A stretch of 64,000 nt of DNA from positions 245,434 to 309,433 of IMG/VR virus record IMGVR_UViG_3300037010_002844, one strand, 5' to 3'. A model generated the notes under the pieces. That model searched no databases and was not told where the DNA came from. It saw nothing but the letters and a program-made list of their open reading frames with translations. Positions 6,038 to 63,805 of this stretch are shown here, piece after piece (positions within the stretch are counted from its first letter, which is position 1; the number at the start of each line of letters is the position of its first letter). Both the position numbers and the translations under genes were made by a program.

Positions 6038-7309
6038 TCAGCGGCCGATCTTATTCAGGATGGTGTCGTAGGACGAGGCGTTGAGCTTTTCCTTGGACGC
6101 CATCAACTCACACCACTCGCGGGCATTGGCCGCACGGCTTTCCCACAAGTTGAAGTAGGGCGCCGCCCAATCGTTGGACTGCATCACCTTCTCAGCGAAG
6201 AGCTTCCGCGAACCCGCTGCGTAATCACGCCAGGCCTCGAAGTTGCGATCGACAGAGATGAGATACTCGCGCACCGCAGCCTGCATCGAACGCAGCTCCC
6301 CAGCCACGTCGGCCTCGACCAACGGGATGACGTCATCAATCGTGCCGCGGATGATGGCCTCGACTGCGGATCGCTTCGAGACAGTCACTAGGTCCTTCGC
6401 TTTGGAAGACAGGACCCAGGCCCGAGACTTGACCTTCTGACGGTTGAAATTCGAGTCAACGACGACCGCGCCTTCCAACTTTGATGGGTCCGCCGCCTCA
6501 ACAAACGCTGCCAGCGCCTTCGGTTCCGACAACTTCCAACGCTGCGGCCGGTTGACGTGCTGCAGTTGCAGCTCCTCGATGACCGATTCATTGCCCGATG
6601 CCGTGTGACGAATCGCCAACAGCGTCACACGAGGCTCGTCATAGCGAACCACGATGCGGTTGTGCGGGCTCGTTAGCTCGAAGACGTACGTCAGTTCCTT
6701 GTTGAGATGAACGACCTGATCGAAGTCGCTCGGAACCCAGTCTAGCTTTTGGCCCGAGTTCGCCTCACGGGTCTCGATCAGGGCCTTGAAGAACAGGTCG
6801 CGGAACGTCATGTTGCCGATCGACATGTCATCCTTGCGGATCGGCAGGTCAGCCTCGGGAACCGACCGCGTACCGACGTGCCACTGACCATGAAGTTCGT
6901 CCCAGTAGACGATGCAACACGTGCCATCGAGCTTCTCGTAGACGCGGAGCTCGGGATCCGACCAGTCGACCCCCGCGGCCGCGACATCGCCGTGGTTGTA
7001 GAAGCGATTCATGGGCCAGGCCAACAGCTCGCAGTCGCCTACGACGCGGTCGCGCCACTTTGCTGTCGACAGAGGCGCGCCACCACGCCGGGCCTCATCG
7101 TGGAGGAACTGCTCCGTCTGCTCGCGAGATGGACGAATCACCATGCCGCGGCACTGTTCCATCAAGGCATTGCCCGACTTCGCCAAGATCTGATCATAGT
7201 TGAGTGAGAACTTATCGAAGCGCGAGTTGGGCCGCGCACAGACACCGTGCTCGTCCTCGAGCTCACGGAACGTATGGGAACGCAGGTACTCCAACACCAA
7301 CGGCTTCAT
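6038..7309 (-). CDS. T4 Rnl1-like RNA ligase
   Basis: Nucleotidyltransferase motif I EKLDGT, RFYN, FELTSPHNRIVVRY, EGAVV, KVK; own promoter upstream. Confidence 0.88.
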   Translation of the reverse strand: MKPLVLEYLRSHTFRELEDEHGVCARPNSRFDKFSLNYDQILAKSGNALMEQCRGMVIRPSREQTEQFLHDEARRGGAPLSTAKWRDRVVGDCELLAWPMNRFYNHGDVAAAGVDWSDPELRVYEKLDGTCCIVYWDELHGQWHVGTRSVPEADLPIRKDDMSIGNMTFRDLFFKALIETREANSGQKLDWVPSDFDQVVHLNKELTYVFELTSPHNRIVVRYDEPRVTLLAIRHTASGNESVIEELQLQHVNRPQRWKLSEPKALAAFVEAADPSKLEGAVVVDSNFNRQKVKSRAWVLSSKAKDLVTVSKRSAVEAIIRGTIDDVIPLVEADVAGELRSMQAAVREYLISVDRNFEAWRDYAAGSRKLFAEKVMQSNDWAAPYFNLWESRAANAREWCELMASKEKLNASSYDTILNKIGR

Positions 7310-9260: not shown

Positions 9261-9878
9261 TTACCGTAGAGTCCGGAACAACTCGTTATTGTCGCCGCAG
9301 TAAGCCTTCAGCTTGTCGAACCAGGCCCGCGACTTCTGCTTGAACATCACGGGTGCCTTGGTTTTCTTGTCGTTCTTGCCTTTGCAGACGACGCCTTCAA
9401 AGGTCATGCCGGGCAGCGAACCGTCCCGAACGCTCTCTATGAAGGCTTCCGTCACTTCGCCTTCGTACAAGACCTTGGCGTGGTCGAGGTGACCAAACAA
9501 CTTCAGGTAGAGCTCAGGCTCCAGAATGCCGGCGCCGAAGGGCGCCACGTCGATCAGGGTTACCGTCTGGTCTTCCTTGAGGTCGTGCATGCCGAAGGCA
9601 CTATTGGGCCCCCAAAATTCGAAGAAGCAGCAGGCCGAGACCCACTTCGATTCCTTGAGCACCTCGTCGATGCCCTTGCCGTACTTGTCGTTGATCAGTC
9701 CGGGCACCTTACCGAAGACAGGATCGGATGCGTCCACTAGCCGCGTGCGGGTGCCGAACTTGTAGAAGCCTTTTTTGCGCGACCACTCGGCGCGGACGTT
9801 GGACCCGTCGAGCTTGTCGAAGGCGACGATTGGGACTCGGCACTCGGTGGCGTAGGGGATTGAGGGATATGATTTCAT
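9261..9878 (-). CDS. RNA ligase (compact Rnl2/Rnl5-like nucleotidyltransferase)
   Basis: YPSI...FDKLDGSN motif I, FFEFWG, FEGVVCK, MFKQK; start taken at MKSYPSI. Confidence 0.8.
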   Translation of the reverse strand: MKSYPSIPYATECRVPIVAFDKLDGSNVRAEWSRKKGFYKFGTRTRLVDASDPVFGKVPGLINDKYGKGIDEVLKESKWVSACCFFEFWGPNSAFGMHDLKEDQTVTLIDVAPFGAGILEPELYLKLFGHLDHAKVLYEGEVTEAFIESVRDGSLPGMTFEGVVCKGKNDKKTKAPVMFKQKSRAWFDKLKAYCGDNNELFRTLR

Positions 9879-10019
9879 GACTTTCTTCACAGAAAAACAT
9901 TCGTCGCCATCGATGTCATCGATAGCCCTAGATCGTCGGTGGTACGATACCACTACGCCACGATCACAAAAGCTTTCACATGTAGGCCATTGGGGACGGC
10001 CTTGGTGGTGATTACTTGC

Positions 10020-13340: not shown

Positions 13341-13420
13341 TGGCACCCCTGGCGAGAGTCGAACTCGCATGTGTCCAATTACGATTTCACCTGCTTAGAA
13401 GGCAGAGTCGATACAGGGGC
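13341..13420 (-). tRNA. Non-canonical (D-loop-relocated) tRNA-Arg(UCU)
   Basis: 7-bp acceptor, T-arm, GCCA, loop CTTCTAA; no D-hairpin, D-loop-like TAATTGGA 3' of the anticodon arm. Confidence 0.8.
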
Positions 13421-13424
13421 ATGA

Positions 13425-13502
13425 TGGCACCCCCGACAGGATTCGAACCTGCATGTGTCCGTTAGCTTTCTCGTGCTTCGAAGGCACGCGGCATACGGGG
13501 GC
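13425..13502 (-). tRNA. Non-canonical (D-loop-relocated) tRNA-Arg(UCG)
   Basis: Same architecture, loop CTTCGAA, TAACGGA segment. Confidence 0.8.
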
Positions 13503-13509
13503 GTGATGG

Positions 13510-13589
13510 TGGCACCGCTGGAGGGATTCGAACCCACGTGCATCCAGCTACCCTTTCAACGGTTTAGGAAACCGAGGGGATACAGCGGC
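13510..13589 (-). tRNA. Non-canonical (D-loop-relocated) tRNA-Arg(CCU)
   Basis: Same architecture, loop TTCCTAA, TAGCTGGA segment. Confidence 0.8.
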
Positions 13590-13594
13590 ATAGT

Positions 13595-13671
13595 TGGCCT
13601 CCCCGGTGGGATTTGAACCCACGACCTCGTGCTTCGGAGACACGCGCTCTGATCCGCTGAGCTACGGGGAG
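13595..13671 (-). tRNA. tRNA-Arg(CCG), canonical
   Basis: Normal D-arm GCTC-AGCGGATCA-GAGC, loop CTCCGAA. Confidence 0.88.
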
Positions 13672-15095: not shown

Positions 15096-15765
15096 TCACC
15101 AGTCACCCTTGAGCCACTTCGACAGGTTGTACTTCTGACCTGTCCTATGGTCAGTGACCAGGTCGTCCTGTGTCCGGTAGGTTCGTACCTTGTCGCCGCG
15201 CTGACCTGAGCCCACCTGTTGCTTGCGCTCGTTGGAGCGCTCGCGGTAGAGCCGTTCAGACTCAGCCTCGTAGAGGCGAGCGGCCAAGACCTTGAAGGCC
15301 ATCGCCCGGTTCTGGTGCTGCGAGCGCTCGTTGTCAATGCGAACCTGAAAGCCGGTGGGCTTGTGGACCGCGATGACGCACGACTCTGTCTTGTTGCGAT
15401 TTTGGCCGCCCGGACCCGAGCCTCGGGCAGTGGTGATTTCCACATCACGGGGGTCTAGTGCCTGGCCGATGACGGTGTCTGGGTTTAAGACCGCGACCGT
15501 CACTGTCGACGTTTGCACACGACCACGCTTTTCTGTCGGTGGAACGCGCTGCCACCTGTGCCCGCCGCCTTCATTTGCAAAGGTCTGCAGGGTTCCTGGG
15601 CCGGAGACAGAGAGCATCACCATCCCTGGTCGATCATCGATTACAGTCGCCTCAAAGACCCCTCCGGGCCGCCGCGTTGGCGTATGCCCGGAGCTGCTCC
15701 TGAACGAGAAGTCTTGCGTCCTCGCCGCCCTCGGCGGCCCTGATCTCGATGATGACAGTTTCCAT
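15096..15765 (-). CDS. Class I peptide release factor (short, lacking domain 1) expressed via a +1 programmed frameshift
   Basis: ORF1 METVIIEIRAAEGGEDA...RRGL ends at CTT-TGA; the +1 frame continues EATVID...EGGGHRWQRVPPT...GSGPGGQNRNKTES...ERSQHQNR...KVRTY. Confidence 0.9.
15652..15666 (-). promoter_or_regulatory. prfB-type +1 frameshift signal
   Basis: CGG AGG GGT CTT TGA G = internal SD + CUU UGA. Confidence 0.88.
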
Positions 15766-15766
15766 G

Positions 15767-16078
15767 TTAGTCCTCCACGGCAACGAGGATGCCGAAGACG
15801 GTCTTCCTCGTGCACCAACCGTTGATGTGGCCGTGATTGTTGCTGATCTGGTAGCGACCATCGCTGCCGATAGCTGACACCTTGTGAAGCATCTGGATGC
15901 CGTTGACCTTGCACAGGACAACGTCGTCAACCTCGACCAACGTTTCGTCCGTGACAGGGGCGACCGTGACCAGCTGCCCGCTGCAGATCCGCGGGACCAT
16001 ACTGTTCCCGTGTGGGCGAAACTTGACCGTCTGACCCTCACGTAGAGCCTGGACGTTGAAGAGAGATCAGTCTGTCAT
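15767..16078 (-). CDS. S24/S26-like peptidase-fold protein with in-frame TGA at codon 4 (readthrough or pseudogene)
   Basis: ATG ACA GAC TGA TCT...FRPHGNSMVP...D.VLCKVNG..LHKV. Confidence 0.65.
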
Positions 16079-19136: not shown

Positions 19137-19209
19137 TGGGTGACCGACGGGAGTTGCACCCGCACTTGTCTGATTCACAGTCAAATGACCCGTTATCGGG
19201 CGGTCACAG
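19137..19209 (-). tRNA. tRNA-His(GUG), shortened D-arm
   Basis: Loop CTGTGAA. Confidence 0.6.
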
Positions 19210-36990: not shown

Positions 36991-37793
<803 letters not shown>

Positions 37794-37794
<1 letters not shown>

Positions 37795-40989: not shown

Positions 40990-41093
40990 AGCGTCACCGT
41001 GGTCTGGATCGAACAGACGTTGCGATAGCAGCCGCATTCGCTTTCGCGTGGTAAGATTCTGTGAACCTCACAACTTTCCTCAAACACGGTGAC
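40990..41093 (-). ncRNA. tRNA-like RNA with 9-bp terminal stem and T-arm but no D/anticodon arm
   Basis: GTCACCGTG/CACGGTGAC; GTCTG-TTCGATC-CAGAC. Confidence 0.55.
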
Positions 41094-43341: not shown

Positions 43342-43417
43342 TGGTGCGCGAGGGTGGAGTTGAACCACCGACCCCCAAGGATAATCCTTGGTGCTCTTCT
43401 GCCTGAGCTACTCGCAC
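43342..43417 (-). tRNA. tRNA with non-canonical anticodon loop (GA-TTA-TC)
   Basis: Intact body with ACCA; CCAAGGA-TTA-TCCTTGG. Confidence 0.7.
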
Positions 43418-43977: not shown

Positions 43978-44067
43978 TGGCTGCGTCGGAAGGAGTCGAA
44001 CCCTCATCCCCTCGATTAACAGTCGAGTGCACTGCCTCTCCGGCTTTACGGTTGTGCTACGACGCAA
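43978..44067 (-). tRNA. tRNA-Asn(GUU) with D-loop insertion
   Basis: Loop CTGTTAA; extra CCG-TAAAGC-CGG hairpin in the D-loop. Confidence 0.8.
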
Positions 44068-52611: not shown

Positions 52612-53106
52612 TCAGGGAGAGGTCAGGTGCCGCGAACGAACGTACAACCTTTGTTGCGCCCTGGCGCCGTTGCGGTACTGTTGCAGGTCTTCCATCATGA
52701 CGGAAAACATCTCGACTGTGCAGTCGTTGTCCTCGAGGGCGCGCTGAAAGGCCTCGGCGACCTCACCGTCCTCAAAGATGCCGATGATCCCATCGAATGC
52801 GCCCTCGATGGCGTCCTTTGCCTCCTTCAGGCCGCAACCCGTGTACTCACGGATGATCTTGATGGAAGCGATCTTCTTTGCAGGGTCGAAGTTCGTCAGC
52901 CTGACGATACACGGGGTCTGGCCCAGGTTGAACATCCGCGAGATGGCCATGCCGGTGAACTTGAACCACTCGGCGATTTTGATAAGCTCCACGTCATCGG
53001 CGAAGGTGATCCAACGTCCGTCTTCTTCTGAGCCGACTGAAAACGAAATGCGCAGGCGTGTGGAACGTGGGCGGTGCTCGCCCGACTGCAGGTCATTGTC
53101 GTTCAT
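52612..53106 (-). CDS. Protein with ribosomal bL12 (L7/L12) C-terminal domain
   Basis: KKIASIKIIREYTGCGLKEAKDAIEG...AE.F..ALE. Confidence 0.82.
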   Translation of the reverse strand: MNDNDLQSGEHRPRSTRLRISFSVGSEEDGRWITFADDVELIKIAEWFKFTGMAISRMFNLGQTPCIVRLTNFDPAKKIASIKIIREYTGCGLKEAKDAIEGAFDGIIGIFEDGEVAEAFQRALEDNDCTVEMFSVMMEDLQQYRNGARAQQRLYVRSRHLTSP

Positions 53107-53694
53107 TTCAAAATAATACCTCAGGTTGATGTCAATATTCACTGCAGCGCGTCTCAGTGACCAACACAGCATCTCGTGTATAAAGATGAGTTCCATGGGG
53201 AACCATCTTTGAGCTTCTCTTGCAACTTAATGCCGCTAAGCGCGATGGGGCCGATGGCGATGCATTATGCCTCATCTTCGTACTCACCGAAGCCCTCTAG
53301 GTCATAGAGGCCGTCGTTGCCATTGATGCGTTTGCCCTTAACATCAAATGGATGTAGGACGAAAGTGCAGATGGACGCGGCGCAGGTAGAGTACAACAGG
53401 CCTGAACATACGAATTTATCACCGCGCAGTTAGGTGACCAATCAATCGACTTTTCGACTAATTTCCGAGGGTCTCTCACGAGGGTTGGCGCCATGGGATG
53501 CATGGGCTTGCCCTTATAGGTGTACAAGACCCTAAGCGCGTCAATACGGACCGGTCATCCACGTGAATAGCTCAACTGAGCCTTTCACTGCGAATACGTC
53601 TCTCATCGGGCAGGCCAGTGAGTGAGCGCAGTCCTTGATGATTCCATGAAACCCGCGTGCCCACCATCATATCACCGCGCGAGATGGTGAACTT

Positions 53695-57190: not shown

Positions 57191-57935
57191 GGCTTTACTC
57201 TATCCTATCATGTCGCAGGGTTAGTGTTCACTCAGCAACGTGCGATTCACGCTTGAAGTGGTACCACCACGTGGACCCAAGCACGATGACCGTGACCAGG
57301 TCCCAACCCTGGTCACCCTTTTCTTTCAGGAAGATCTCGAGCTTGCCATGAGGCAACTCGAGAGGACTCAGACGCATGACATTGTATTCGAAAGTCTTCA
57401 CGAGCTTGTCCTGTCTTGAGGGTCAGACGGGTTCACTTCATCATGAAGAAGATGAAGACGCTGCTGCTCACGATGAGCAGATTCATCACGATGAAAAAGA
57501 TCGTGACCTCGCGCCAATCGACGTTGCCCAGGAAGGGAGTGCGACCTTTGTTGAACATGATCTTACTGTACCACTCAAGTCAGAGGGAGTTCACAGAGGA
57601 TTCATCACAACATGTCGGGGTTCCGCTGATGATCCTATGTCCGCCTCAGGTCACAGTCGAGGCTCGGGCAGCTCTCTCTCTCCAAGTCCGTGATCCGCTG
57701 CAGTGCAATCGCAAACTGAGATTCCAGCTCTGTGACCCGGGATTCCAAGGACTTTCTCCTGCTCGCGGTCTTGAGCCTGTGCTACGTGCCCGTGAACCGG
57801 GCAGTCTGGTTCTTCCGCGATGAAGGGCCCGCGAGGCGGCGGTCCTGAGCACGTCCCTGCTTTCCATCATAAAGTCGCATCCCTCCGGCGACTCGCATGA
57901 TATCGAGCTTCCTGTGTCGCGCGCTACCTCACACA

Positions 57936-58178
57936 TCAACGCCCAGACGGGCGCGGGTTGGCGAGGCACTCGATGTCTCCACAGGTACAGTCCCAATGGA
58001 CGAACTGCATGCCCTTGATGTAGTGCCGCGTGCCCTTGCTGCGGTTGTTCTGCGAGTGCTTCACCGCCTCTTCCCAGCGGATGTGCCGCATGCGGGACTG
58101 CGGGAGGAAGACACCACCGTTGGCCTTGAAGCCACTGTCGCGGCGGATCTTGTTGCTGACACGTTCGTAGATCCTCAT
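57936..58178 (-). CDS. Early hypothetical protein
   Basis: Leaderless promoter motif. Confidence 0.65.
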   Translation of the reverse strand: MRIYERVSNKIRRDSGFKANGGVFLPQSRMRHIRWEEAVKHSQNNRSKGTRHYIKGMQFVHWDCTCGDIECLANPRPSGR

Positions 58179-58256
58179 GTCTCTACTCTACCCCGATCGC
58201 AGTTGAAGATTCACCGGGACTGAGTCACCCGGTTGAACTGTGGAACAAGGTTCATC

Positions 58257-58511
58257 TCAGTTATCGACGCGGGAGCTCAAGTAGCGGACGATTCGCTGGT
58301 ACCCGTCGACCATGCCGGTATCCGCGTCCAGGATCAGGTCGGCCAGGAAGGGATCGTGCTCGCGGAGGGCGTTCAGCATCTGGGCATAGCGATCGTCCTG
58401 CGCGGCAGCCGTAAGCTGGTCGGCCATGACGCTATGCGACGCCAACAGCTGCGTGATCGCGGTGTTGAACTCCTGTTTCGACAAGGCGGGCTTCTTGGGC
58501 TTGCTCATCAT
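58257..58511 (-). CDS. Early hypothetical protein
   Basis: Leaderless promoter motif. Confidence 0.65.
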   Translation of the reverse strand: MMSKPKKPALSKQEFNTAITQLLASHSVMADQLTAAAQDDRYAQMLNALREHDPFLADLILDADTGMVDGYQRIVRYLSSRVDN

Positions 58512-58532
58512 GGGTTAATCCTATGCTCAGAG

Positions 58533-58763
58533 CTAGGGCTTTTTCACTGTGGCACGGCAGAGGTTTCTGGTGTCCGCGGACTTGATGAACTCACACCAGC
58601 TCGGGTCCTTCTTGGTTGTCGCCAGGCAGAAGTTCCGCCCGTCGGGATCCTTGATGAACTCGCAGTTGCTCGTTGCGGCCCGCGCCGTCATCAAGAAGAG
58701 CAACACTGTCAGCCCAATCAAGGCTGCGAAGACCAGCATCAGGAACTTCTCACGGGGCATCAA
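58533..58763 (-). CDS. Small secreted Cys-repeat protein
   Basis: Signal peptide; repeated CEFIK..D.RN.C.AT. Confidence 0.65.
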   Translation of the reverse strand: MMPREKFLMLVFAALIGLTVLLFLMTARAATSNCEFIKDPDGRNFCLATTKKDPSWCEFIKSADTRNLCRATVKKP

Positions 58764-58840
58764 AATATTCTTTGATATTGTAGAATGGTTCTACACCACC
58801 TAAGCACTCGGGACCAGTCTTGAAACTGGCGCCTCTGATC

Positions 58841-59026
58841 TGGTCCCCCACCCAGGAGTCGAACCTAGTCGATTCACCGTCAACCCTGGAGGGCGCCGCT
58901 ACCCGCGAGCCTTTTTGACGATGTGGGAGAGAGTTGAAGGGAAAGTTTTTTACGAGCGTTGCATCCCAATTGCTCGAATTGAAGTGGTCTCTTTTTGATT
59001 CGGCTGGGAGACCGTGACCAGCCAGT
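58841..59026 (-). ncRNA. Pseudoknot-containing RNA ending in an anticodon-less tRNA-like domain with CCA
   Basis: Own promoter GTGAAC-N18-TAGAGT with no ATG; two H-type pseudoknots; CTCCCAC/GTGGGGG-A-CCA acceptor and CTAGG-TTCGACT-CCTGG T-arm. Confidence 0.72.
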
Positions 59027-59068
59027 GAGTCTACTCTATCCAAATCGTGGTGGAGAGTTCACTGTCTC

Positions 59069-59296
59069 TCAACCGTACTTCTTCAGCTCTGCCAGAGCCC
59101 ACCGCTTCAGCTCGGGCTCGAAGCGCTCCACCCGCGAGCGCGTCTCAGGATCCAGGTCAGGGTCCTCCGCCAGTGCGAAGAAAATGCTCTCGAGGTGATC
59201 CACCGCGCCCTCACCGTCCTGCGAGCCACAGTCACTCGCGAGCCCTTCCCACGCCGCCGCGACCGCACACTTGAAGTCTCGTTCGGTGATTGCCAT
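59069..59296 (-). CDS. Early hypothetical protein
   Basis: Leaderless promoter motif. Confidence 0.65.
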   Translation of the reverse strand: MAITERDFKCAVAAAWEGLASDCGSQDGEGAVDHLESIFFALAEDPDLDPETRSRVERFEPELKRWALAELKKYG

Positions 59297-59328
59297 GAAT
59301 CTATCCTACCCTGTTCAGAGGCGAAGGT

Positions 59329-59535
59329 TCACTGCGCCCACCGAGCCGCGCCCAGCATCTCCTTGCTCGAGAGGATCTCTGCGTCGAGCATCAGCATATC
59401 GTGGCTCAGCCAACGCCGGGCCCGCTTGATCGCCTCACCTTCGGTGGCGGCCTTGATCTTGATGGCGCTGGGCTTCACTGCGACCGCACCGAGCTTGCGG
59501 AAGAGAACGCGGAAGATGCGAATGTCAGGCGGCAT
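59329..59535 (-). CDS. Hypothetical protein
   Basis: 68 aa, coupled to upstream ORF. Confidence 0.55.
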   Translation of the reverse strand: MPPDIRIFRVLFRKLGAVAVKPSAIKIKAATEGEAIKRARRWLSHDMLMLDAEILSSKEMLGAARWAQ

Positions 59536-59701
59536 CGAGCTGCTCCTTCATGGCGTCCCGGGCCTCGATACGCTTGGCGCGGCGGTTGATGGCGCGCTTG
59601 ATGCGGGCCGCGGGCTTGCTGAGTCCACCGCCACAGTCCTTGCTGGTGTAGCGGCCGGCTTCTTCCCAGTGCTTGTTGGCGATCTTCTTCCAGGTGGCCA
59701 T
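59525..59701 (-). CDS. Early basic 58-aa protein (not in ORF track)
   Basis: GTGCAA-N18-TAGAGT-N6-ATG; MATWKKIANKHWEEAGR... Confidence 0.65.
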   Translation of the reverse strand: MATWKKIANKHWEEAGRYTSKDCGGGLSKPAARIKRAINRRAKRIEARDAMKEQLDAA

Positions 59702-59719
59702 GTGTCTACTCTACCACGA

Positions 59720-60073
59720 TCAACCGGGAGTTTGCACCAGGCCCGCCTTGACTGCCGCGAGCTCCGCGAGCTGGGTTCGGGCATATGTGTGGGCCAGCTT
59801 CCGCGCCTGCTCCAGGTGGATGCCGGTGAGGTGGTTCCCGCGGGCCAGCCACTTGCCGTAGTAGGCAATGCGATGCCCATGACTGTGACGGACGCCCACT
59901 TGGTTGTTAACGTGAGTGCTCTCGGTCGCCTTCTCGGAAGTGGTCTGGCGCTCGTAGAGGACCTTGATGGCACGCTCCACCGCGGCAGGATTGGCGTCCA
60001 GGGACGCGCGGACCTTCGCGGTCATCTCAGAGCGAACCTTGCTAGAGAGCTTGATGCGAGCGGGGTGGGCCAT
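59720..60073 (-). CDS. Early hypothetical protein
   Basis: Leaderless promoter; LYERQT..E...T...N.VG motif. Confidence 0.72.
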   Translation of the reverse strand: MAHPARIKLSSKVRSEMTAKVRASLDANPAAVERAIKVLYERQTTSEKATESTHVNNQVGVRHSHGHRIAYYGKWLARGNHLTGIHLEQARKLAHTYARTQLAELAAVKAGLVQTPG

Positions 60074-60105
60074 GATTTGATTCTATCCCGATCGATGTTG
60101 AAGAT

Positions 60106-60399
60106 TCACGGAGTCGCGCGGATCGTGAGACCCTCCACGTTGGTGAGCCCGAGCTCCTTGGCCGACCAGGGCGTGAAGATGACGTCAACGGTGCACTTCC
60201 ACTTCGCGGTGGCCAAGAACTGGGTGATGGCTTTGGCGATCTCCGAGGTGTGGCGGCACTTCCCGAAGCGCTGAGCGCCCTCGCAGGTGCAGCGTCCACG
60301 GTTGTCCAGCCGGTAGACGCGATCGTCAAATGGGTTGTCCGAGAAGACGTATGCCATCGTGGTGTGGAGAGACTCTCGGTGGGCCTTGATCCGTGCCAT
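60106..60399 (-). CDS. SWIM-type Zn-finger early protein
   Basis: CTC.......CRH; leaderless promoter. Confidence 0.7.
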   Translation of the reverse strand: MARIKAHRESLHTTMAYVFSDNPFDDRVYRLDNRGRCTCEGAQRFGKCRHTSEIAKAITQFLATAKWKCTVDVIFTPWSAKELGLTNVEGLTIRATP

Positions 60400-60603
60400 G
60401 AGACAATCCTACCTCAGTTCACCAAGGATTTGCACCGTCACCCGTGAGGCCCTCTCAGGCCCGGTAGGTAGGAAACCCTGTCCTGACCGGGAAGGCACTC
60501 ACGGGGGTCACTGGTGGGTCCGGTCAGGGGTCCCGCTTGGGCAGTGATCGATCATTGCATCGAGTTCGTTGTTCTGGCTCGTGTTCTTCCCCTCTCTCTC
60601 CCC

Positions 60604-60969
60604 TCAGTCGACCGAGCACATCAGCGCTTCCTGGACCAGCGTCTGGTTGAGGCCCTGCTTGAAACCGTGGAACGTGCGCCAGGTGAAGCGCTTGGTGGGC
60701 TGCCCGTAACGCTTGAAGTTCCACCGCTCGTCCGCGATGATGGACTTGACGAGCTTCAGCACGTCCTTCGGGGACGAGGACTTTGCCTTCATGTGGAGGC
60801 GCTCCTCGAAACCCGTGGTGTCGCCGGATCCGTCCATGCCGCCAACCGGCGAGCTGGAAGAGACGATCACGTGAACCAGGCGGGTATCTGCGTCGAGCTG
60901 GACCTCCATGCGATCCGTGTACCGCGAGTCACCTGCGATGTTGGCGTAGATGTAACCGAGTTGGATCAT
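60604..60969 (-). CDS. Early hypothetical protein
   Basis: Leaderless promoter motif. Confidence 0.7.
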   Translation of the reverse strand: MIQLGYIYANIAGDSRYTDRMEVQLDADTRLVHVIVSSSSPVGGMDGSGDTTGFEERLHMKAKSSSPKDVLKLVKSIIADERWNFKRYGQPTKRFTWRTFHGFKQGLNQTLVQEALMCSVD

Positions 60970-61060
60970 GGGTCTAGTCTACCTCATCTTCTGGGAGAAA
61001 TACACAGCCCCGTGAGAGCTTCTAGCGCTCGCGGGCTTGCAACTCATTGCACTGCTTGGG

Positions 61061-61273
61061 TCAGTCGTCGTAGCGACTGAAGTACTTGCCGCAGCACGGG
61101 CAGCTGGCATTGTTCCCGAGGCCCGGGTGGGAGCACCACTCGCGAGTCTCAGCGAGCAGCGCTCGACTGAGCTTGAGCTCGGTCTCCAACGCTTTGATGT
61201 GCTCCAGGACGCTCTGAACCGCGGGCGCGACCTGGTCCTGCGTCATCGGGAACTCAATCTTCGGGATCGCCAT
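61061..61273 (-). CDS. Small coiled-coil/Zn-binding protein
   Basis: MAIPKIEF...WCSHP...CPCCGK. Confidence 0.6.
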   Translation of the reverse strand: MAIPKIEFPMTQDQVAPAVQSVLEHIKALETELKLSRALLAETREWCSHPGLGNNASCPCCGKYFSRYDD

Positions 61274-61379
61274 CACTTCTTCTCTTTGCGTTTGAAGGGC
61301 CCCTCGTGGAGGATCGCCTGCTTGATCTGCTCGCGGGTTTTGGCCATGTCTCTGTTGTACCTTGTTTCGTTGTTGAAGT

Positions 61380-61598
61380 TCACAGCTGCGCGGCACGCTG
61401 GAGGCAATCACGCCACTCTCGGCAGAAGTAGTCCCACTCCTCGTGGCTGGGATCACGGCCCAGCACGCCCGAGACAGTGCGGCGGACTGCGTGGTCGGGC
61501 TCGTGGCCCAGTTCAGCCCACTCCTCGGCCATGCCGCTGCCGATCGTGATGTCCCAGGCCGTGCTCTCGAGGATCCGACGGGTGCCTTGGTTGACCAT
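61380..61598 (-). CDS. Early hypothetical protein
   Basis: Leaderless promoter motif. Confidence 0.65.
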   Translation of the reverse strand: MVNQGTRRILESTAWDITIGSGMAEEWAELGHEPDHAVRRTVSGVLGRDPSHEEWDYFCREWRDCLQRAAQL

Positions 61599-61945
61599 GA
61601 GATTATCCTACCATGTTCAGATGTGAATTTGCACTCGCAACGGACATTGGACGGTGCCCACCAGCCACGCCACGTGATCCACGAGCGTCATCAGCACCAG
61701 CTCGAGGCGGGCCATGCGCTTCTAACTTGTCCGCGAGGCCTATTGTAGGCCCAAGTCACAGACGATTTGCACAATGACACACGTGAATACTCACGGGCCC
61801 AAGTGGGGTAACCCATTACCCTGACATGAAAGCACTCACGTGGGTCCCACGGGGGCTGTGACCGTGGCCCGAAACGGGGTCAAGGCCTGACCCAGTGAGG
61901 ATCGCGGCCTTGACTGTTGGAGTTTACCTTGTGAACTTCTGCGAA

Positions 61946-62593
61946 TCAGGCGTCCGTGCCCGTCGCCTCACGATCGGCCGCAGCCAGTGGCTCGACGTCC
62001 GAGGTGAAGCAGTACACCGGCTTGTTGACGCCCTCGATCTCGACGTAGCAGCGGATGCGCTGCGCCTTGGTGACCGTACCCGTCTTGCCGATGAAGCGCG
62101 GGTCGCCGCCAACGATGGTGACCGTATGACCGGCCTCGATCCTCGTGTCCAGTGCTCGCTCCGTCGCCTTGACGCGGTTGAAGTGCTGGATGTGCAGCGC
62201 CAGGCTCGCCAGGTCGGCGCGGCCCAGGTTCGCGGTCGCATCACCGAAGAGGATCTGCGCGGCACCCGCGAGCTGCGGAAGCTTCTCGCCTGCCTTGGTG
62301 ACCTTGCTCATGTGCGCCGGCTTGCGGGCTGCCAGCTTCTCGGCGCGGGCCTTCTCGCGGGCCGCTGTCTTCGCAGCCTTGCGCTCCGCGCGCTCCGCCT
62401 CGAGCTTCGTCTTGCGGGCCTCGCGCTCTTCGTCGGTGAGCTTCGGCTTCGCAGCTGCCCTCGCGGGCTTCTCCGCCTTCGTCTCCGCGGTCTTCGTCGC
62501 GGTCTCGCCCTTGGCCTTGGCCGCTGCGCGGGCCTTGGCCGCCGCAATCGCTGCATCGATCTTCGAGGTCTTCTCGTCCGACTTGTCACTCAT
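61946..62593 (-). CDS. Ala/Lys-rich protein with C-terminal KOW/SH3-like domain (possible nucleic-acid binder)
   Basis: Histone-like N-terminal half; G.TVTIVGG...GKTG.V; strong SD and promoter. Confidence 0.75.
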   Translation of the reverse strand: MSDKSDEKTSKIDAAIAAAKARAAAKAKGETATKTAETKAEKPARAAAKPKLTDEEREARKTKLEAERAERKAAKTAAREKARAEKLAARKPAHMSKVTKAGEKLPQLAGAAQILFGDATANLGRADLASLALHIQHFNRVKATERALDTRIEAGHTVTIVGGDPRFIGKTGTVTKAQRIRCYVEIEGVNKPVYCFTSDVEPLAAADREATGTDA

Positions 62594-62705
62594 GGTGTTC
62601 TCTCCGTGAATCCTTGGTTTTGGTGGGTGCCAGCTTGTAGGTTGAATCTATGTCACACCGCAGGTGCTTTACACCCACGAAGTTCGCAAAGATTCGTTGA
62701 TGATT

Positions 62706-62945
62706 TCAGGCATCGAGCTCGAACCAGGTCTCGACCAGCGCCTTCGCGTGGGGCTTGCGCTGCTTGACCGTGATGCTGCCGTCGTCGTTGACGCTCTCGA
62801 CGGTGGCCGGGACGTCCTTGCGGAAGGCGCTCGCCTCCCCATCCTTTTCCGCGACGAACCCGTAGAGGACGCCCTTGTGGCAGAGGGCGAGGGTACCCAT
62901 GGTCGAGTAGATGCGGCGCGGCGAGTCGGAGGTCTTCATGCTCAT
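62706..62945 (-). CDS. Early hypothetical protein
   Basis: 79 aa, promoter upstream. Confidence 0.6.
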   Translation of the reverse strand: MSMKTSDSPRRIYSTMGTLALCHKGVLYGFVAEKDGEASAFRKDVPATVESVNDDGSITVKQRKPHAKALVETWFELDA

Positions 62946-63024
62946 GGTGTGCTCTCTTCCGTGGTGGTAAGGTTGGAGGGGGCTTGATTAGCCTATCACG
63001 TGATCTGGGGAACTTGCACTGCGT

Positions 63025-63288
63025 TCAGTCATTGAAGATGTGAAGCCGGGTGCCCTGCTCGTCGGCCGACTTGTAGATCCAGGCAGCGATCTCGCCGTCG
63101 TTCACCTCGGTGTTCTCGTAGAGGAAGTCCTTGGTGCGCCCGGTGCGGTGGCTCTGAACCGTCAGCTTCATCGGGGCGCACCAGTCTGGGCTCATGCAGG
63201 CGATGCTGGAGGCCTCCGTGATGCCAACGTTATCCTTCCAGATGAAGATGAAGCCAGGGATGACCGGGATGTCGCAGGAAGTTTCCAT
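63025..63288 (-). CDS. Early hypothetical protein
   Basis: Leaderless promoter motif. Confidence 0.68.
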   Translation of the reverse strand: METSCDIPVIPGFIFIWKDNVGITEASSIACMSPDWCAPMKLTVQSHRTGRTKDFLYENTEVNDGEIAAWIYKSADEQGTRLHIFND

Positions 63289-63320
63289 GGTTCTAGTCTA
63301 CCACGATCCTCACTAAAGGT

Positions 63321-63506
63321 TCACATCTCGCGGGTGATGATCTCCTCATCGTCAACGTCTTTGTTCCAGACGTTGATCGACAGGCACCGCGCCTTCTAGG
63401 AGGCGAGCTCTGTTGCTTCCTCCTCCGTCGCAGCCTCGACCTCAACGCCCCGCGAGAGGCGTTGGATGACCTTAACGGTCTAGGTGCGGACCTTGGGCTT
63501 AGGCAT
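63321..63506 (-). pseudogene. DpnD/PcfM-like gene with two in-frame TAG codons
   Basis: MPKPKVRT*TVKVIQRLSRGVEVEAATEEEATELAS*KARC...; intact promoter. Confidence 0.6.
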
Positions 63507-63580
63507 GTCTAGATCCTAAACACGCCGGGACTTGAAGATTCACAGTGCAAACTTTCGTCCATGTGTGGTAGACTAGAACC

Positions 63581-63805
63581 ATGGAAACCATCCAGTGCCG
63601 GACCTGCGGCGGCGTCGCCCATCCCGCGACCGGGTGCGCCTACACCGCGACCTTCATCGTCTGCGGGCCGTGCACCCGCGAGTTCTGGGCCTGGCTGCGC
63701 TCGCGGGTCAACAGCCGCCCGAGTCGGCGCCACGGTGGCCCGAGCTTTTACGATCACGTCAACCGCGTCGCTCCCCCTGTGCAAATCCACCACGAAACGG
63801 AGTAA
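63581..63805 (+). CDS. Early Zn-finger protein
   Basis: GTGCAA-N18-TAGACT-N6-ATG; CxxC...CxxC. Confidence 0.7.
   Translation: METIQCRTCGGVAHPATGCAYTATFIVCGPCTREFWAWLRSRVNSRPSRRHGGPSFYDHVNRVAPPVQIHHETE

What the first reader, a model, noticed from the sequence alone, without database searches (positions are those of the whole stretch)
58795..59062. Independently promoted early ncRNA: two pseudoknots plus an anticodon-less tRNA-like domain ending in CCA
Seen: the early-promoter consensus (GTGAAC-N18-TAGAGT) is followed by no ATG, with a predicted start near 59026. The RNA starts with an H-type pseudoknot (GGCTGG/CCAGCC; GGTCTC/GAGACC) and a probable second one (CGAGC/GCTCG; GGGA/TCCC). It then forms a domain with a 7-bp acceptor (CTCCCAC/GTGGGGG-A-CCA), one long helix (ATCGTCAA/TTGACGGT) in place of the D and anticodon arms, and a T-arm. 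Downstream CTGGTCCC and GAGGCGCC can pair with GGGACCAG and GGCGCC, suggesting a switchable or processed 3' end. Inference: the layout recalls the tmRNA TLD or plant-virus pseudoknot+TLS, but lacks the Ala G3:U70 pair and a tag ORF. It may be a decoy for SmpB, EF-Tu, RelA or tRNA-targeting defences, made at the start of infection far from the tRNA arrays.
Basis: partly seen in the sequence, partly recalled or inferred. Interest (0 to 1): 0.82.

Follow-up and report, generated by a model that had tools for sequence, protein, structure and literature searches.

The report
Phage-encoded non-decoding tRNA-like small RNA
A giant phage carries, behind its own promoter, a small RNA gene that keeps the amino-acid-accepting half of an arginine tRNA but has lost the ability to read codons; related phages keep it almost unchanged, so it is a working tRNA mimic of still unknown purpose rather than a dead gene.

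Summary
The core of the finding is real. A promoter of the class that drives the neighbouring leaderless genes (GTGAAC-N18-TAGAGT) is followed by no start codon. An 89-nt tRNA-like domain (window 58929-58841, minus strand) has a 7-bp acceptor stem, a canonical T arm, A73 and an encoded CCA. I found homologues in seven other metagenomic phage contigs. They are 91-99% identical to each other, while the adjacent gene is 59-86% identical. Twelve of 26 base pairs carry compensatory double changes against the window copy. Rfam, ARAGORN and the tRNA and tmRNA models do not detect the element. One has an invariant UCCA loop that looks like an Arg(CCU) anticodon loop minus one base. The acceptor signature (C1-G72, U2·G71, C3-G70, A73) was found only in tRNA-Arg among phage tRNAs sampled. 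In the relatives the domain starts 2-3 nt after the promoter, with no pseudoknots and no encoded CCA. Pseudoknot 1 is therefore lineage-specific (p about 0.001). Pseudoknot 2 and the 3' "switch" are not supported. The best reading is an exapted, non-decoding tRNA-Arg mimic matured like a tRNA. Its partner and function are untested, and no RNA data were available.

The parts
59033..59062 (-). Promoter: -35 GTGAAC (59062-59057), 18-nt spacer, -10 TAGAGT (59038-59033). The predicted transcription start is A at 59026.
   Evidence: The same motif recurs 8 more times on the minus strand between 57.2 and 63.6 kb, each time with ATG 6 nt (once 11 nt) after the -10, so those mRNAs are leaderless. A related pattern gave 3 matches against 0.14 expected. 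The start site is inferred, not measured.
58986..59023 (-). Pseudoknot 1 (H-type): GGCUGG/CCAGCC and GGUCUC/GAGACC, A-rich loop 3, starting 3 nt from the predicted 5' end.
   Evidence: Perfect 6+6 bp. It arose in 26 of 20000 random leaders. A 39-nt block 58985-59023 is found with unrelated flanks on other low-depth contigs in runs X1 and X4. It is absent from all homologues of the tRNA-like domain.
58939..58976 (-). Proposed pseudoknot 2 (CGAGC/GCUCG and GGGA/UCCC).
   Evidence: The pairings exist, but this class of knot arose in 15% of random leaders and about 600 times per strand of the window. It is not conserved. Treat it as unproven.
58841..58929 (-). tRNA-like domain, 89 nt, in order:
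- acceptor 5' strand, 58929-58923
- helix 2, 58922-58916 paired with 58882-58876
- A-rich linker, 58915-58909
- hairpin a, 58908-58896 (G-rich pentaloop)
- hairpin b, 58894-58883 (UCCA loop)
- linker, 58875-58869
- T arm, 58868-58852
- acceptor 3' strand, 58851-58845
- A73, 58844
- CCA, 58843-58841
   Evidence: Detection is reciprocal. A model built from the window alone finds the relatives at about 33 bits. A model built from the relatives alone finds this site at 43.8 bits, E about 1e-8. On the alignment, 96.8% of cells are paired, 12 of 26 pairs carry double changes, 0 of 500 shuffles reach that, and slid controls give 1-3 pairs.
58761..58840 (-). 3' trailer between CCA and the next ORF. 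It holds a local hairpin (GCCAGU/ACUGGU) and CUGGUCCC (58817-58810), which is complementary to the acceptor 3' end plus CCA.
   Evidence: Read from the sequence. No terminator was predicted, and no canonical copy of the promoter lies before the ORF. A related strain diverges upstream of 58798. The trailer is not conserved in homologues.
58533..58760 (-). Downstream gene, probably co-transcribed: a 75-aa protein with a signal peptide and a repeated Cys motif.
   Evidence: 578 relatives at E<=0.001 in the representative protein library. It has no Shine-Dalgarno sequence and no promoter of its own. Genes downstream of the domain differ between relatives.
59069..59296 (-). Upstream 75-aa gene, the syntenic anchor that led to the homologues.
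   Evidence: 56-58% identical relatives P0002 and P0003. P0003 lies one gene upstream of the homologous RNA on L008.

Best explanation
This is a gene for a stand-alone, non-decoding tRNA mimic that evolved from a phage arginine tRNA.

Inferred from promoter geometry: it is transcribed from a promoter of the class that drives the surrounding small leaderless genes.

Shown by comparison: the RNA folds into an acceptor stem and a T arm like a tRNA. The D and anticodon arms are replaced by an extra 5-7 bp helix that carries two short hairpins. One has a G-rich loop and could dock on the T loop. The other has an invariant UCCA tetraloop that looks like an Arg(CCU) anticodon loop minus one base, so it cannot read a codon.

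Inferred from tRNA biology: RNase P trims the 5' side. That removes 97 nt here, which frees a pseudoknotted leader, and 2-3 nt in the relatives. The 3' end becomes CCA, which is encoded here and would be added after RNase Z-type cleavage in the relatives.

Inferred, not shown: the mature 85-89 nt RNA then acts in trans through its acceptor end, T arm and elbow, by occupying a factor that recognises tRNA-Arg or tRNA 3' ends. That factor could be a synthetase, a tRNA-tail or acceptor-directed defence enzyme, or a phage enzyme. The RNA would never enter decoding.
For: - Promoter without a start codon in a set where the other 8 copies have ATG at a fixed distance.
- Seven homologues, each directly behind that lineage's own promoter.
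- In L130 the next gene has its own leaderless promoter, so there the RNA is a separate transcription unit.
- Downstream genes differ between relatives.
- RNA identity is 91-99%, against 59-86% nucleotide identity for the neighbouring gene.
- Covariation: 12 of 26 pairs with double changes and 96.8% of cells paired.
- Stepwise compensation within the relatives: T stem CAGG/CCUG, then CGGG/CCUG, then CGGG/CCCG; hairpin a CGGGA/UCCCG against GGAC/GUCC.
- No conserved ORF on the RNA strand in L008.
- Among phage tRNAs ending GGG-A-C, all 7 that start CUC are tRNA-Arg. Their anticodon loop CUCCUAA, T arm and acceptor resemble this RNA.
- The phage also encodes 47+ tRNAs, two RNA-ligase-like proteins, a release factor and an L7/L12-like protein, so it invests heavily in tRNA and translation.
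Against: - No transcript data: no RNA run was listed for this sequence.
- The host is unknown.
- There are only two deep lineages, and the alignment used for pair counts was fitted to the model, so the compensatory changes mostly reflect one split.
- Folding energy of single sequences is not better than shuffles.
- In 4 of 7 relatives an ORF starts 1-13 nt after the domain, which also fits a cis role.
- The tRNA-Arg descent of hairpin b rests on about 6 nt.
- No partner protein was identified, so the trans-acting step is pure inference.
Confidence: 0.6

Rival explanations
1. It is a cis-acting tRNA-like processing or stabilising module, comparable to the t-elements of plant mitochondria. Its only role would be to attract RNase P and RNase Z, or to block 5' decay, and so define the ends and expression of the downstream mRNA.
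For: In L008/L128, L133 and L134 the next ORF starts 10, 13 and 1 nt after the domain, and no promoter motif is seen in those short gaps. In the window the next ORF has no promoter and no Shine-Dalgarno sequence. tRNA-like t-elements that shape mRNA ends are known (PMC1920247).
Against: The domain sits at the very 5' end of its transcript, so no upstream mRNA needs separating, and the promoter alone already makes leaderless mRNAs elsewhere. L130 has a separate promoter for the downstream gene. Downstream genes are not homologous between lineages. Loops and linkers are nearly invariant, with 91-99% identity, which a shape-only processing signal does not require.
Confidence: 0.2
2. It is an unusual but functional decoding or frameshifting tRNA-Arg. 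The extra helix would take the place of the D stem in the anticodon limb, and the short loop would still contact a codon.
For: Helix 2 (5-7 bp) plus hairpin b (3-4 bp) is about as long as a D stem plus an anticodon stem. The phage carries three D-arm-less tRNA-Arg-like genes with proper 7-nt loops at 13345-13589. The loop keeps U-C-C-A.
Against: The loop has 4 nt (6 at most if the closing pair opens) and in the window is closed by three G-C pairs. The Rfam tRNA model gives no match even at E<=10, and ARAGORN calls nothing.
Confidence: 0.07
3. It is a decaying tRNA pseudogene with no function.
For: It is tRNA-derived, and other degenerate tRNA-like stretches exist in the arrays.
Against: It has its own promoter in two lineages. 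It is far more conserved than the flanking genes. Compensatory changes occur in the remodelled parts.
Confidence: 0.04
4. It is a tmRNA-like or plant-virus-TLS-like element: pseudoknots plus a tRNA-like domain acting in ribosome rescue or as a 3' telomere.
For: A superficial layout of pseudoknots followed by a tRNA-like domain ending in CCA.
Against: There is no G3:U70, no tag frame, and both acceptor strands lie after the pseudoknots. ARAGORN and Rfam tmRNA models are negative. The pseudoknots are absent from all relatives. The phage has a DNA genome, so a 3' genomic TLS role does not apply.
Confidence: 0.02
5. The 97-codon open frame 59043-58750 encodes a protein.
For: The frame is open.
Against: It could start only at a TTG inside the -10 box, it has no in-frame ATG, and it overlaps the next gene. 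It has no PHROG match. No ORF lies on that strand across the homologous RNA in L008.
Confidence: 0.01

Closest known systems
Phage tRNA-Arg with a C1-G72 / U2·G71 / C3-G70 / A73 acceptor (mostly anticodon CCU; for example on L088, L031, L125)
   Same: The same acceptor signature. Acceptor stems are near-identical (CUCCCCG and CUCACCG against CUCCCAC and CUCACGG). The T arm core CAGGUUCGAnUCCUG is shared. Both have a 5-nt variable-loop-like linker. The loop CUCCUAA compares with CUCC-AG and UUCC-AA.
   Different: There is no D arm and no 7-nt anticodon loop. An extra 5-7 bp helix lifts two short hairpins. The RNA has its own promoter outside the tRNA arrays. tRNA models do not detect it.
tmRNA tRNA-like domain
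   Same: An acceptor stem plus a T arm with a helix in place of the anticodon arm, and a non-decoding tRNA mimic matured by RNase P (PMC11143913).
   Different: There is no G3:U70, no mRNA-like tag, and no pseudoknot ring between the acceptor strands. The D-loop analogue is replaced by a hairpin. Model searches are negative.
Pseudo-tRNAs and tRNA-derived small RNAs outside translation (Bacillus cereus tRNA-Other, PMC3399842; bacterial YrlA Y RNAs, PMC4201824; MALAT1 mascRNA and herpesvirus vtRNAs, cited from my own knowledge)
   Same: A tRNA-shaped RNA kept by selection that does not decode and is probably handled by tRNA-processing enzymes.
   Different: It is phage-encoded and sits at the start of a transcript from the promoter class of the neighbouring leaderless genes. 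Its lower half has a new architecture. Unlike YrlA, the 5' and 3' ends form a true acceptor stem with A73(-CCA), and no Ro-binding helix is present.
Phage RNase P substrates that are not tRNAs (phi80 M3 RNA, P1/P7 C4 antisense RNA; T4 species 1 and 2 RNAs, cited from my own knowledge)
   Same: Small stable phage RNAs with tRNA-like features that are cut out of longer transcripts (PMC11143913).
   Different: There is no detectable sequence relation and no antisense target is evident. Here the tRNA half is nearly canonical.
Plant mitochondrial t-elements
   Same: A tRNA-like structure next to an ORF that could define mRNA ends (PMC1920247).
   Different: Here it is at the 5' end of the transcript, it is highly sequence-conserved, and in one relative it is a separate transcription unit.

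Membership tests
tmRNA | tRNA-like domain with the alanine identity pair G3:U70 | tested here: not met
   Pair 3:70 is C-G in all 6 sequences. The only wobble is U2·G71.
tmRNA | Internal tag reading frame and pseudoknots lying between the two acceptor strands; detection by ARAGORN or the Rfam tmRNA models | tested here: not met
   No tmRNA was found by ARAGORN or by Rfam at gathering score or at E<=10. Both acceptor strands lie 3' of the pseudoknots.
Canonical tRNA | Cloverleaf with a D arm and a 7-nt anticodon loop; match to Rfam RF00005 | tested here: not met
   No RF00005 match at E<=10 in the window region, nor at E<=1 in four relatives. ARAGORN is negative. The loops have 5 and 4 nt.
Canonical tRNA | 7-bp acceptor stem, 5-bp T stem with a UUCRANY loop, discriminator base, 3' CCA | tested here: met
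   All are present in the window. The relatives keep the acceptor stem, the T loop and A73-C74. They do not encode the full CCA, and the first T-stem pair is G×A.
Phage tRNA-Arg of the CUC-acceptor type | C1-G72, U2·G71, C3-G70, A73 | tested here: met
   Invariant in all 6 aligned sequences. In the sample of phage tRNAs, 7 of 7 with this signature are tRNA-Arg.
Phage tRNA-Arg of the CUC-acceptor type | Arginine anticodon in a 7-nt loop (C35 identity base); charging by ArgRS | tested here: not met
   The loop is UCCA (4 nt), or CUCCAG/UUCCAA (6 nt) if opened, so one base is missing relative to CUCCUAA. Charging is not testable with these tools.
Plant-virus 3' tRNA-like structure | Located at the 3' end of an RNA genome; acceptor arm formed by a pseudoknot; aminoacylated | tested here: not met
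   The genome is DNA and the element is an internal gene with a promoter. The acceptor is a plain 7-bp helix of the 5' and 3' ends. Aminoacylation is not testable.
Bacterial Y RNA (YrlA) | tRNA-like module joined to a Ro-binding helix formed by the RNA termini; rsr gene nearby; Rfam match | tested here: not met
   The termini form an acceptor stem with a free A73-CCA. No RNA family matches, and none of the 20 neighbouring proteins scanned between 44.8 and 62.6 kb matched a Ro-type family.
Pseudo-tRNA / tRNA-mimic small RNA (functional class, not a sequence family) | tRNA-shaped, under selection, unable to decode | tested here: met
   Conservation and covariation and the absence of an anticodon loop. 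Expression and non-association with ribosomes were not tested.
t-element-like mRNA processing signal | Fixed position relative to an mRNA end that it generates | tested here: inconclusive
   The distance to the next ORF is 1, 10, 13, 80, 88 or 148 nt, and in one relative there is an intervening promoter.

The most novel reading that the evidence does not exclude
The RNA is an RNA-based counter-defence or hijacking device. It would be an abundant, non-decoding tRNA-Arg look-alike that either soaks up a host enzyme attacking tRNA acceptor ends, CCA tails or tRNA-Arg, or is arginylated and serves a reaction outside the ribosome. For tail-cleaving Cas12a3, the authors state that viral tRNAs cannot readily provide escape and that a viral answer is unknown. 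Such a decoy would be the first of its kind in phages.
Probability: 0.15. Interest if true: 0.85.

Novelty: new variant of a known kind. Interest (0 to 1): 0.62.

Why it matters
Phage tRNAs are currently explained as codon supplements or as replacements for tRNAs cut by host defences. A conserved phage tRNA derivative that cannot decode, yet evolves as slowly as a tRNA and has its own promoter, points to a third use of the tRNA shape by phages. It gives a concrete 85-89 nt molecule with which to test several things: RNA decoys against acceptor- or tail-directed defences, synthetase capture, and tRNA-dependent reactions outside the ribosome. It also shows that standard tRNA finders miss several tRNA-like genes in this genome, including three D-arm-less tRNA-Arg-like genes. 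tRNA counts in giant phages are therefore likely to be underestimates.

Tried and rejected
- Rfam at gathering score over the whole window, and at E<=10 over 58600-59200, gave only tRNAs elsewhere and two chance snoRNA matches.
- Rfam on four relatives gave nothing.
- ARAGORN found no tmRNA and no tRNA here.
- BLAST of the region and of two window proteins against 50,697 phage records found no relative; a near-mode search of window 40000-64000 matched only tRNA genes.
- Exact and degenerate DNA patterns in IMG/VR found only the source contig.
- The same degenerate pattern in 185,579 species genomes gave 6 hits. None matched the RNA model or any tRNA, so they are chance hits.
- Relatives found through the 117-aa gene (L003, L005, L006, L007) and through the zinc-ribbon gene (L143, L144, L152), and two of the 182-aa gene relatives (L135, L136), lack the RNA.
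- L041, L017 and L062 share the acceptor type but not the body. L041 lies in an odd tRNA array with repeated inserts. None was counted as a member.
- A search for RNA sequencing runs listed none. The DNA runs only confirmed the sequence.
- Minimum-free-energy folding was uninformative.
- A first structural model with a single bulged hairpin inside the long helix was replaced after the relatives showed two hairpins.

Full report
Setting. The window is the last 64 kb of a 309-kb IMG/VR contig, IMGVR_UViG_3300037010_002844. The same DNA is present in sediment and microbial-mat metagenomes. ARAGORN tRNA genes. The window also encodes two RNA-ligase-like proteins, a release factor, a sigma-70-type factor, a DNA ligase and an L7/L12 C-terminal-domain protein. 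No isolated phage in the reference collection is related, and the host is unknown. Around the finding all genes are small and lie on the minus strand.

The promoter. On the minus strand between 57.2 and 63.6 kb the motif GTGAAY-N18-TAGRRT occurs nine times. In eight copies an ATG follows 6 nt (once 11 nt) after the -10 box, so these mRNAs are leaderless. A related pattern is enriched, with 3 matches against 0.14 expected. The ninth copy (59062-59033) is followed by ACUGGCUGG and has no start codon. By analogy its transcript starts at 59026. "Early" is an inference from the gene neighbourhood; nothing measures timing.

The RNA in the window.
- Pseudoknot 1 (59023-58986) has two perfect 6-bp stems and an A-rich third loop. 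A knot of this quality arose in 26 of 20000 random leaders, and 7 occur in 128 kb.
- In DNA runs X1 and X4, a separate low-depth contig carries a 39-nt block (58985-59023) that coincides with this knot, with one mismatch and unrelated flanks. The knot therefore looks like a discrete module.
- Pseudoknot 2 is of a kind that arose in 15% of random leaders and has no support.
- The tRNA-like domain (58929-58841) has a 7-bp acceptor stem, a T arm with a UUCGACU loop, A73 and CCA.
- Folding energies are no better than shuffles.
- No terminator is predicted downstream.
- The next ORF (58760-58533) encodes a member of a widespread family of small secreted Cys-repeat proteins. It has neither a promoter nor a Shine-Dalgarno sequence, so it is probably co-transcribed.

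Homologues. The 75-aa gene just upstream has two distant relatives. On the contig of one of them (L008), a covariance model built from the window sequence alone found a match of 32.9 bits one gene further downstream. Relatives of the gene after it led to more copies on L128/L129, L130/L131, L132, L133 and L134. Relatives of the gene before it led to L149-L151. A model built only from these relatives, using a revised structure, finds the window domain at 43.8 bits, E about 1e-8, ahead of every true tRNA. Detection is thus reciprocal. No other copy lies in the window. None was found in more distant relatives, in IMG/VR or in the representative genomes. No Rfam family matches.

Structure. The consensus, in order, is:
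- a 7-bp acceptor stem;
- directly after it, helix 2 (7 bp in the window, 5 bp in the relatives);
- inside helix 2, a 7-nt A-rich linker;
- hairpin a, with 4-5 bp, a G-rich pentaloop and a different sequence in each lineage;
- hairpin b, GCCY-UCCA-RGGU, with an invariant loop;
- a 5-7 nt linker;
- the T arm;
- the acceptor 3' strand and A73.

On the six-sequence alignment, 96.8% of cells pair and 12 of 26 pairs carry changes on both sides. None of 500 shuffles reaches this, and sliding the partners by 1-3 columns leaves 1-3 such pairs.

There are caveats. The alignment was fitted to the model, and most double changes reflect the single split between the window and the relatives. Stepwise compensation is nevertheless seen within the relatives. 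The T stem runs CAGG/CCUG, then CGGG/CCUG, then CGGG/CCCG. Hairpin a is CGGGA/UCCCG in most and GGAC/GUCC in L134. Helix 2 shows A-U to G·U. The first T-stem pair is G×A in the relatives.

What is conserved and what is not.
- In every relative the domain begins 2-3 nt after that lineage's own promoter (GTGTAATCG-N17-TTAGAAT), or after about 15 nt in L132. There is no room for pseudoknots.
- After A73 only C74 is constant (CGG, CCG, CUG, CUA), so CCA would have to be added.
- The sequence complementary to the acceptor 3' end in the window trailer has no counterpart in the relatives.
- The following gene differs between lineages. It starts 1, 10, 13, 88 or 148 nt downstream, and in L130 it has its own leaderless promoter.
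- The RNA is 91-99% identical among the relatives, while the neighbouring gene is 59-86% identical in DNA and 30-88% in protein.
- No ORF crosses the RNA on its strand in L008.

Origin. A loose scan of IMG/VR for T arm plus GGG-A-C 3' ends returned more than 117 loci. Among the tRNAs ARAGORN calls there, the seven that begin CUC are all tRNA-Arg: five CCU, one UCU and one UCG. Those beginning CCC spread over 13 specificities. The CUC start gives C1-G72, U2·G71 and C3-G70 with A73, the invariant signature of this RNA.
- These tRNA-Arg genes share near-identical acceptor stems and the T-arm core with the RNA.
- Their anticodon loop CUCCUAA differs from hairpin b (CUCC-AG in the window, UUCC-AA in the relatives) by one missing base.
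- I therefore read hairpin b as a vestigial Arg(CCU) anticodon arm that has closed into a UCCA tetraloop. I read hairpin a as the D-arm counterpart and helix 2 as an added stalk. This step is inference from short matches.
- The same phage carries three tandem ARAGORN-missed tRNA-Arg-like genes without a D arm but with proper 7-nt loops, with anticodons UCU, UCG and CCU (13345-13589). Remodelled tRNA-Arg bodies are thus a theme in this genome.

Mechanism. Shown:
- a promoter without a start codon;
- a conserved, covarying tRNA-like fold;
- no decoding loop;
- no conserved ORF;
- independence from any particular downstream gene.

Inferred from tRNA biology:
- RNase P cuts at C1, which in the window would also release the 97-nt pseudoknotted leader;
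- the 3' end is trimmed to, or extended with, CCA;
- the mature RNA presents an authentic acceptor, T-arm and elbow surface.

Speculative: it acts in trans on a factor that recognises tRNA-Arg or tRNA 3' ends. [quoted passage not shown] That makes a decoy role plausible but unproven.

The main rival is a cis-acting processing module like plant mitochondrial t-elements (PMC1920247). It is weakened by four points: the position at the 5' end of the transcript, the separate promoter in L130, the variable downstream genes, and the near-invariance of loops and linkers. It is not excluded.

Known non-tRNA substrates of RNase P include tmRNA, plant-virus TLS, phage M3 RNA and the P1/P7 C4 RNA (PMC11143913). 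Pseudo-tRNAs outside translation are known in Bacillus cereus (PMC3399842), and tRNA-mimicking Y RNAs occur in many bacteria (PMC4201824). The present RNA belongs to that functional class, but it has a new architecture and a new setting.

Verdict. This is a real, conserved, previously undescribed phage small-RNA family. The two-pseudoknot and switch elements are not part of the conserved unit, and the tmRNA and TLS comparison is an analogy only. Expression, processing and function remain to be shown.

Noticed in passing
window 13345-13420, 13429-13502, 13514-13589 (minus strand): Three tandem tRNA-like genes that ARAGORN and Rfam miss. Each has a 7-bp acceptor stem, a T arm, G73-CCA and a 7-nt loop reading UCU, UCG or CCU (all arginine). 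None has a D arm. A short helix encloses the anticodon hairpin, and a GGA-containing linker precedes the T arm. They sit next to tRNA-Arg(CCG) at 13595-13671.
   Followed up: partly
window 43982-44066, 19140-19207 and 40995-41091 (minus strand): Further acceptor-plus-T-arm candidates inside the tRNA arrays that no tool called. One has a GUU (Asn) loop and an oversized D region. The tRNA count of 47 is an underestimate.
   Followed up: no
window 15096-15914 (minus) and 43342-43417 (minus): A phage-encoded class-I release factor (RF-1 and PCRF domains) together with a tRNA whose anticodon UUA reads the UAA stop codon. The pair suggests manipulation of stop-codon reading.
   Followed up: no
window 52612-53196 (minus): A 194-aa protein with a ribosomal L7/L12 C-terminal domain, the part of the ribosome stalk that recruits translation GTPases.
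   Followed up: no
window 6038-7309 and 9261-9953 (minus): A T4 Rnl1-type RNA ligase and a second, weaker RNA-ligase-like protein flank the first tRNA array. This is the classic tRNA-repair enzyme type.
   Followed up: no
window 57200-63600 (minus strand); L008, L128-L134, L149: The early-region genes are leaderless: the -10 box is followed by exactly 6 nt and then ATG. The related phages use the same geometry with a different upstream box (GTGTAATCG instead of GTGAAC). A sigma-70-type factor is encoded at 36991-37794.
   Followed up: partly
window 58985-59023; runs X1 and X4: A 39-nt block equal to pseudoknot 1 lies, with one mismatch and unrelated flanks, on separate contigs of about 200 nt. 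Their depth is about 2.5-2.9, against 8.9-20.5 for the phage in the same runs. It is not in IMG/VR.
   Followed up: partly
window 58585-58798; run X3: A 241-nt contig is about 92% identical over the small secreted-protein gene and diverges completely upstream of 58798. A related strain therefore has this gene behind a different upstream region.
   Followed up: no
L132 328-415 and L149 8069-8156: Between the tRNA-like RNA and the next gene these two relatives share an 88-nt segment with only 4 transitions. It ends in a T-arm-like GGG-UUCGAGU-CCC hairpin just before the ATG. It may be a second structured element.
   Followed up: partly
L017 4833-4720 (minus) and L041 3480-3960: L017 has a 110-nt element with the same CUC/GGG-A acceptor and T arm but a different body. 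It lies behind a GTGAAC box and directly before a GAGG-ATG gene start. L041 has an array of interrupted tRNA-like genes with a repeated GTTCTCGG insert.
   Followed up: partly
L062 23-106 (minus): A D-arm-less tRNA-Arg(UCU)-like gene with acceptor CUCCCCG/CGGGGGG. Its helix encloses the anticodon hairpin, the same ground plan as the finding but with a true 7-nt loop.
   Followed up: partly
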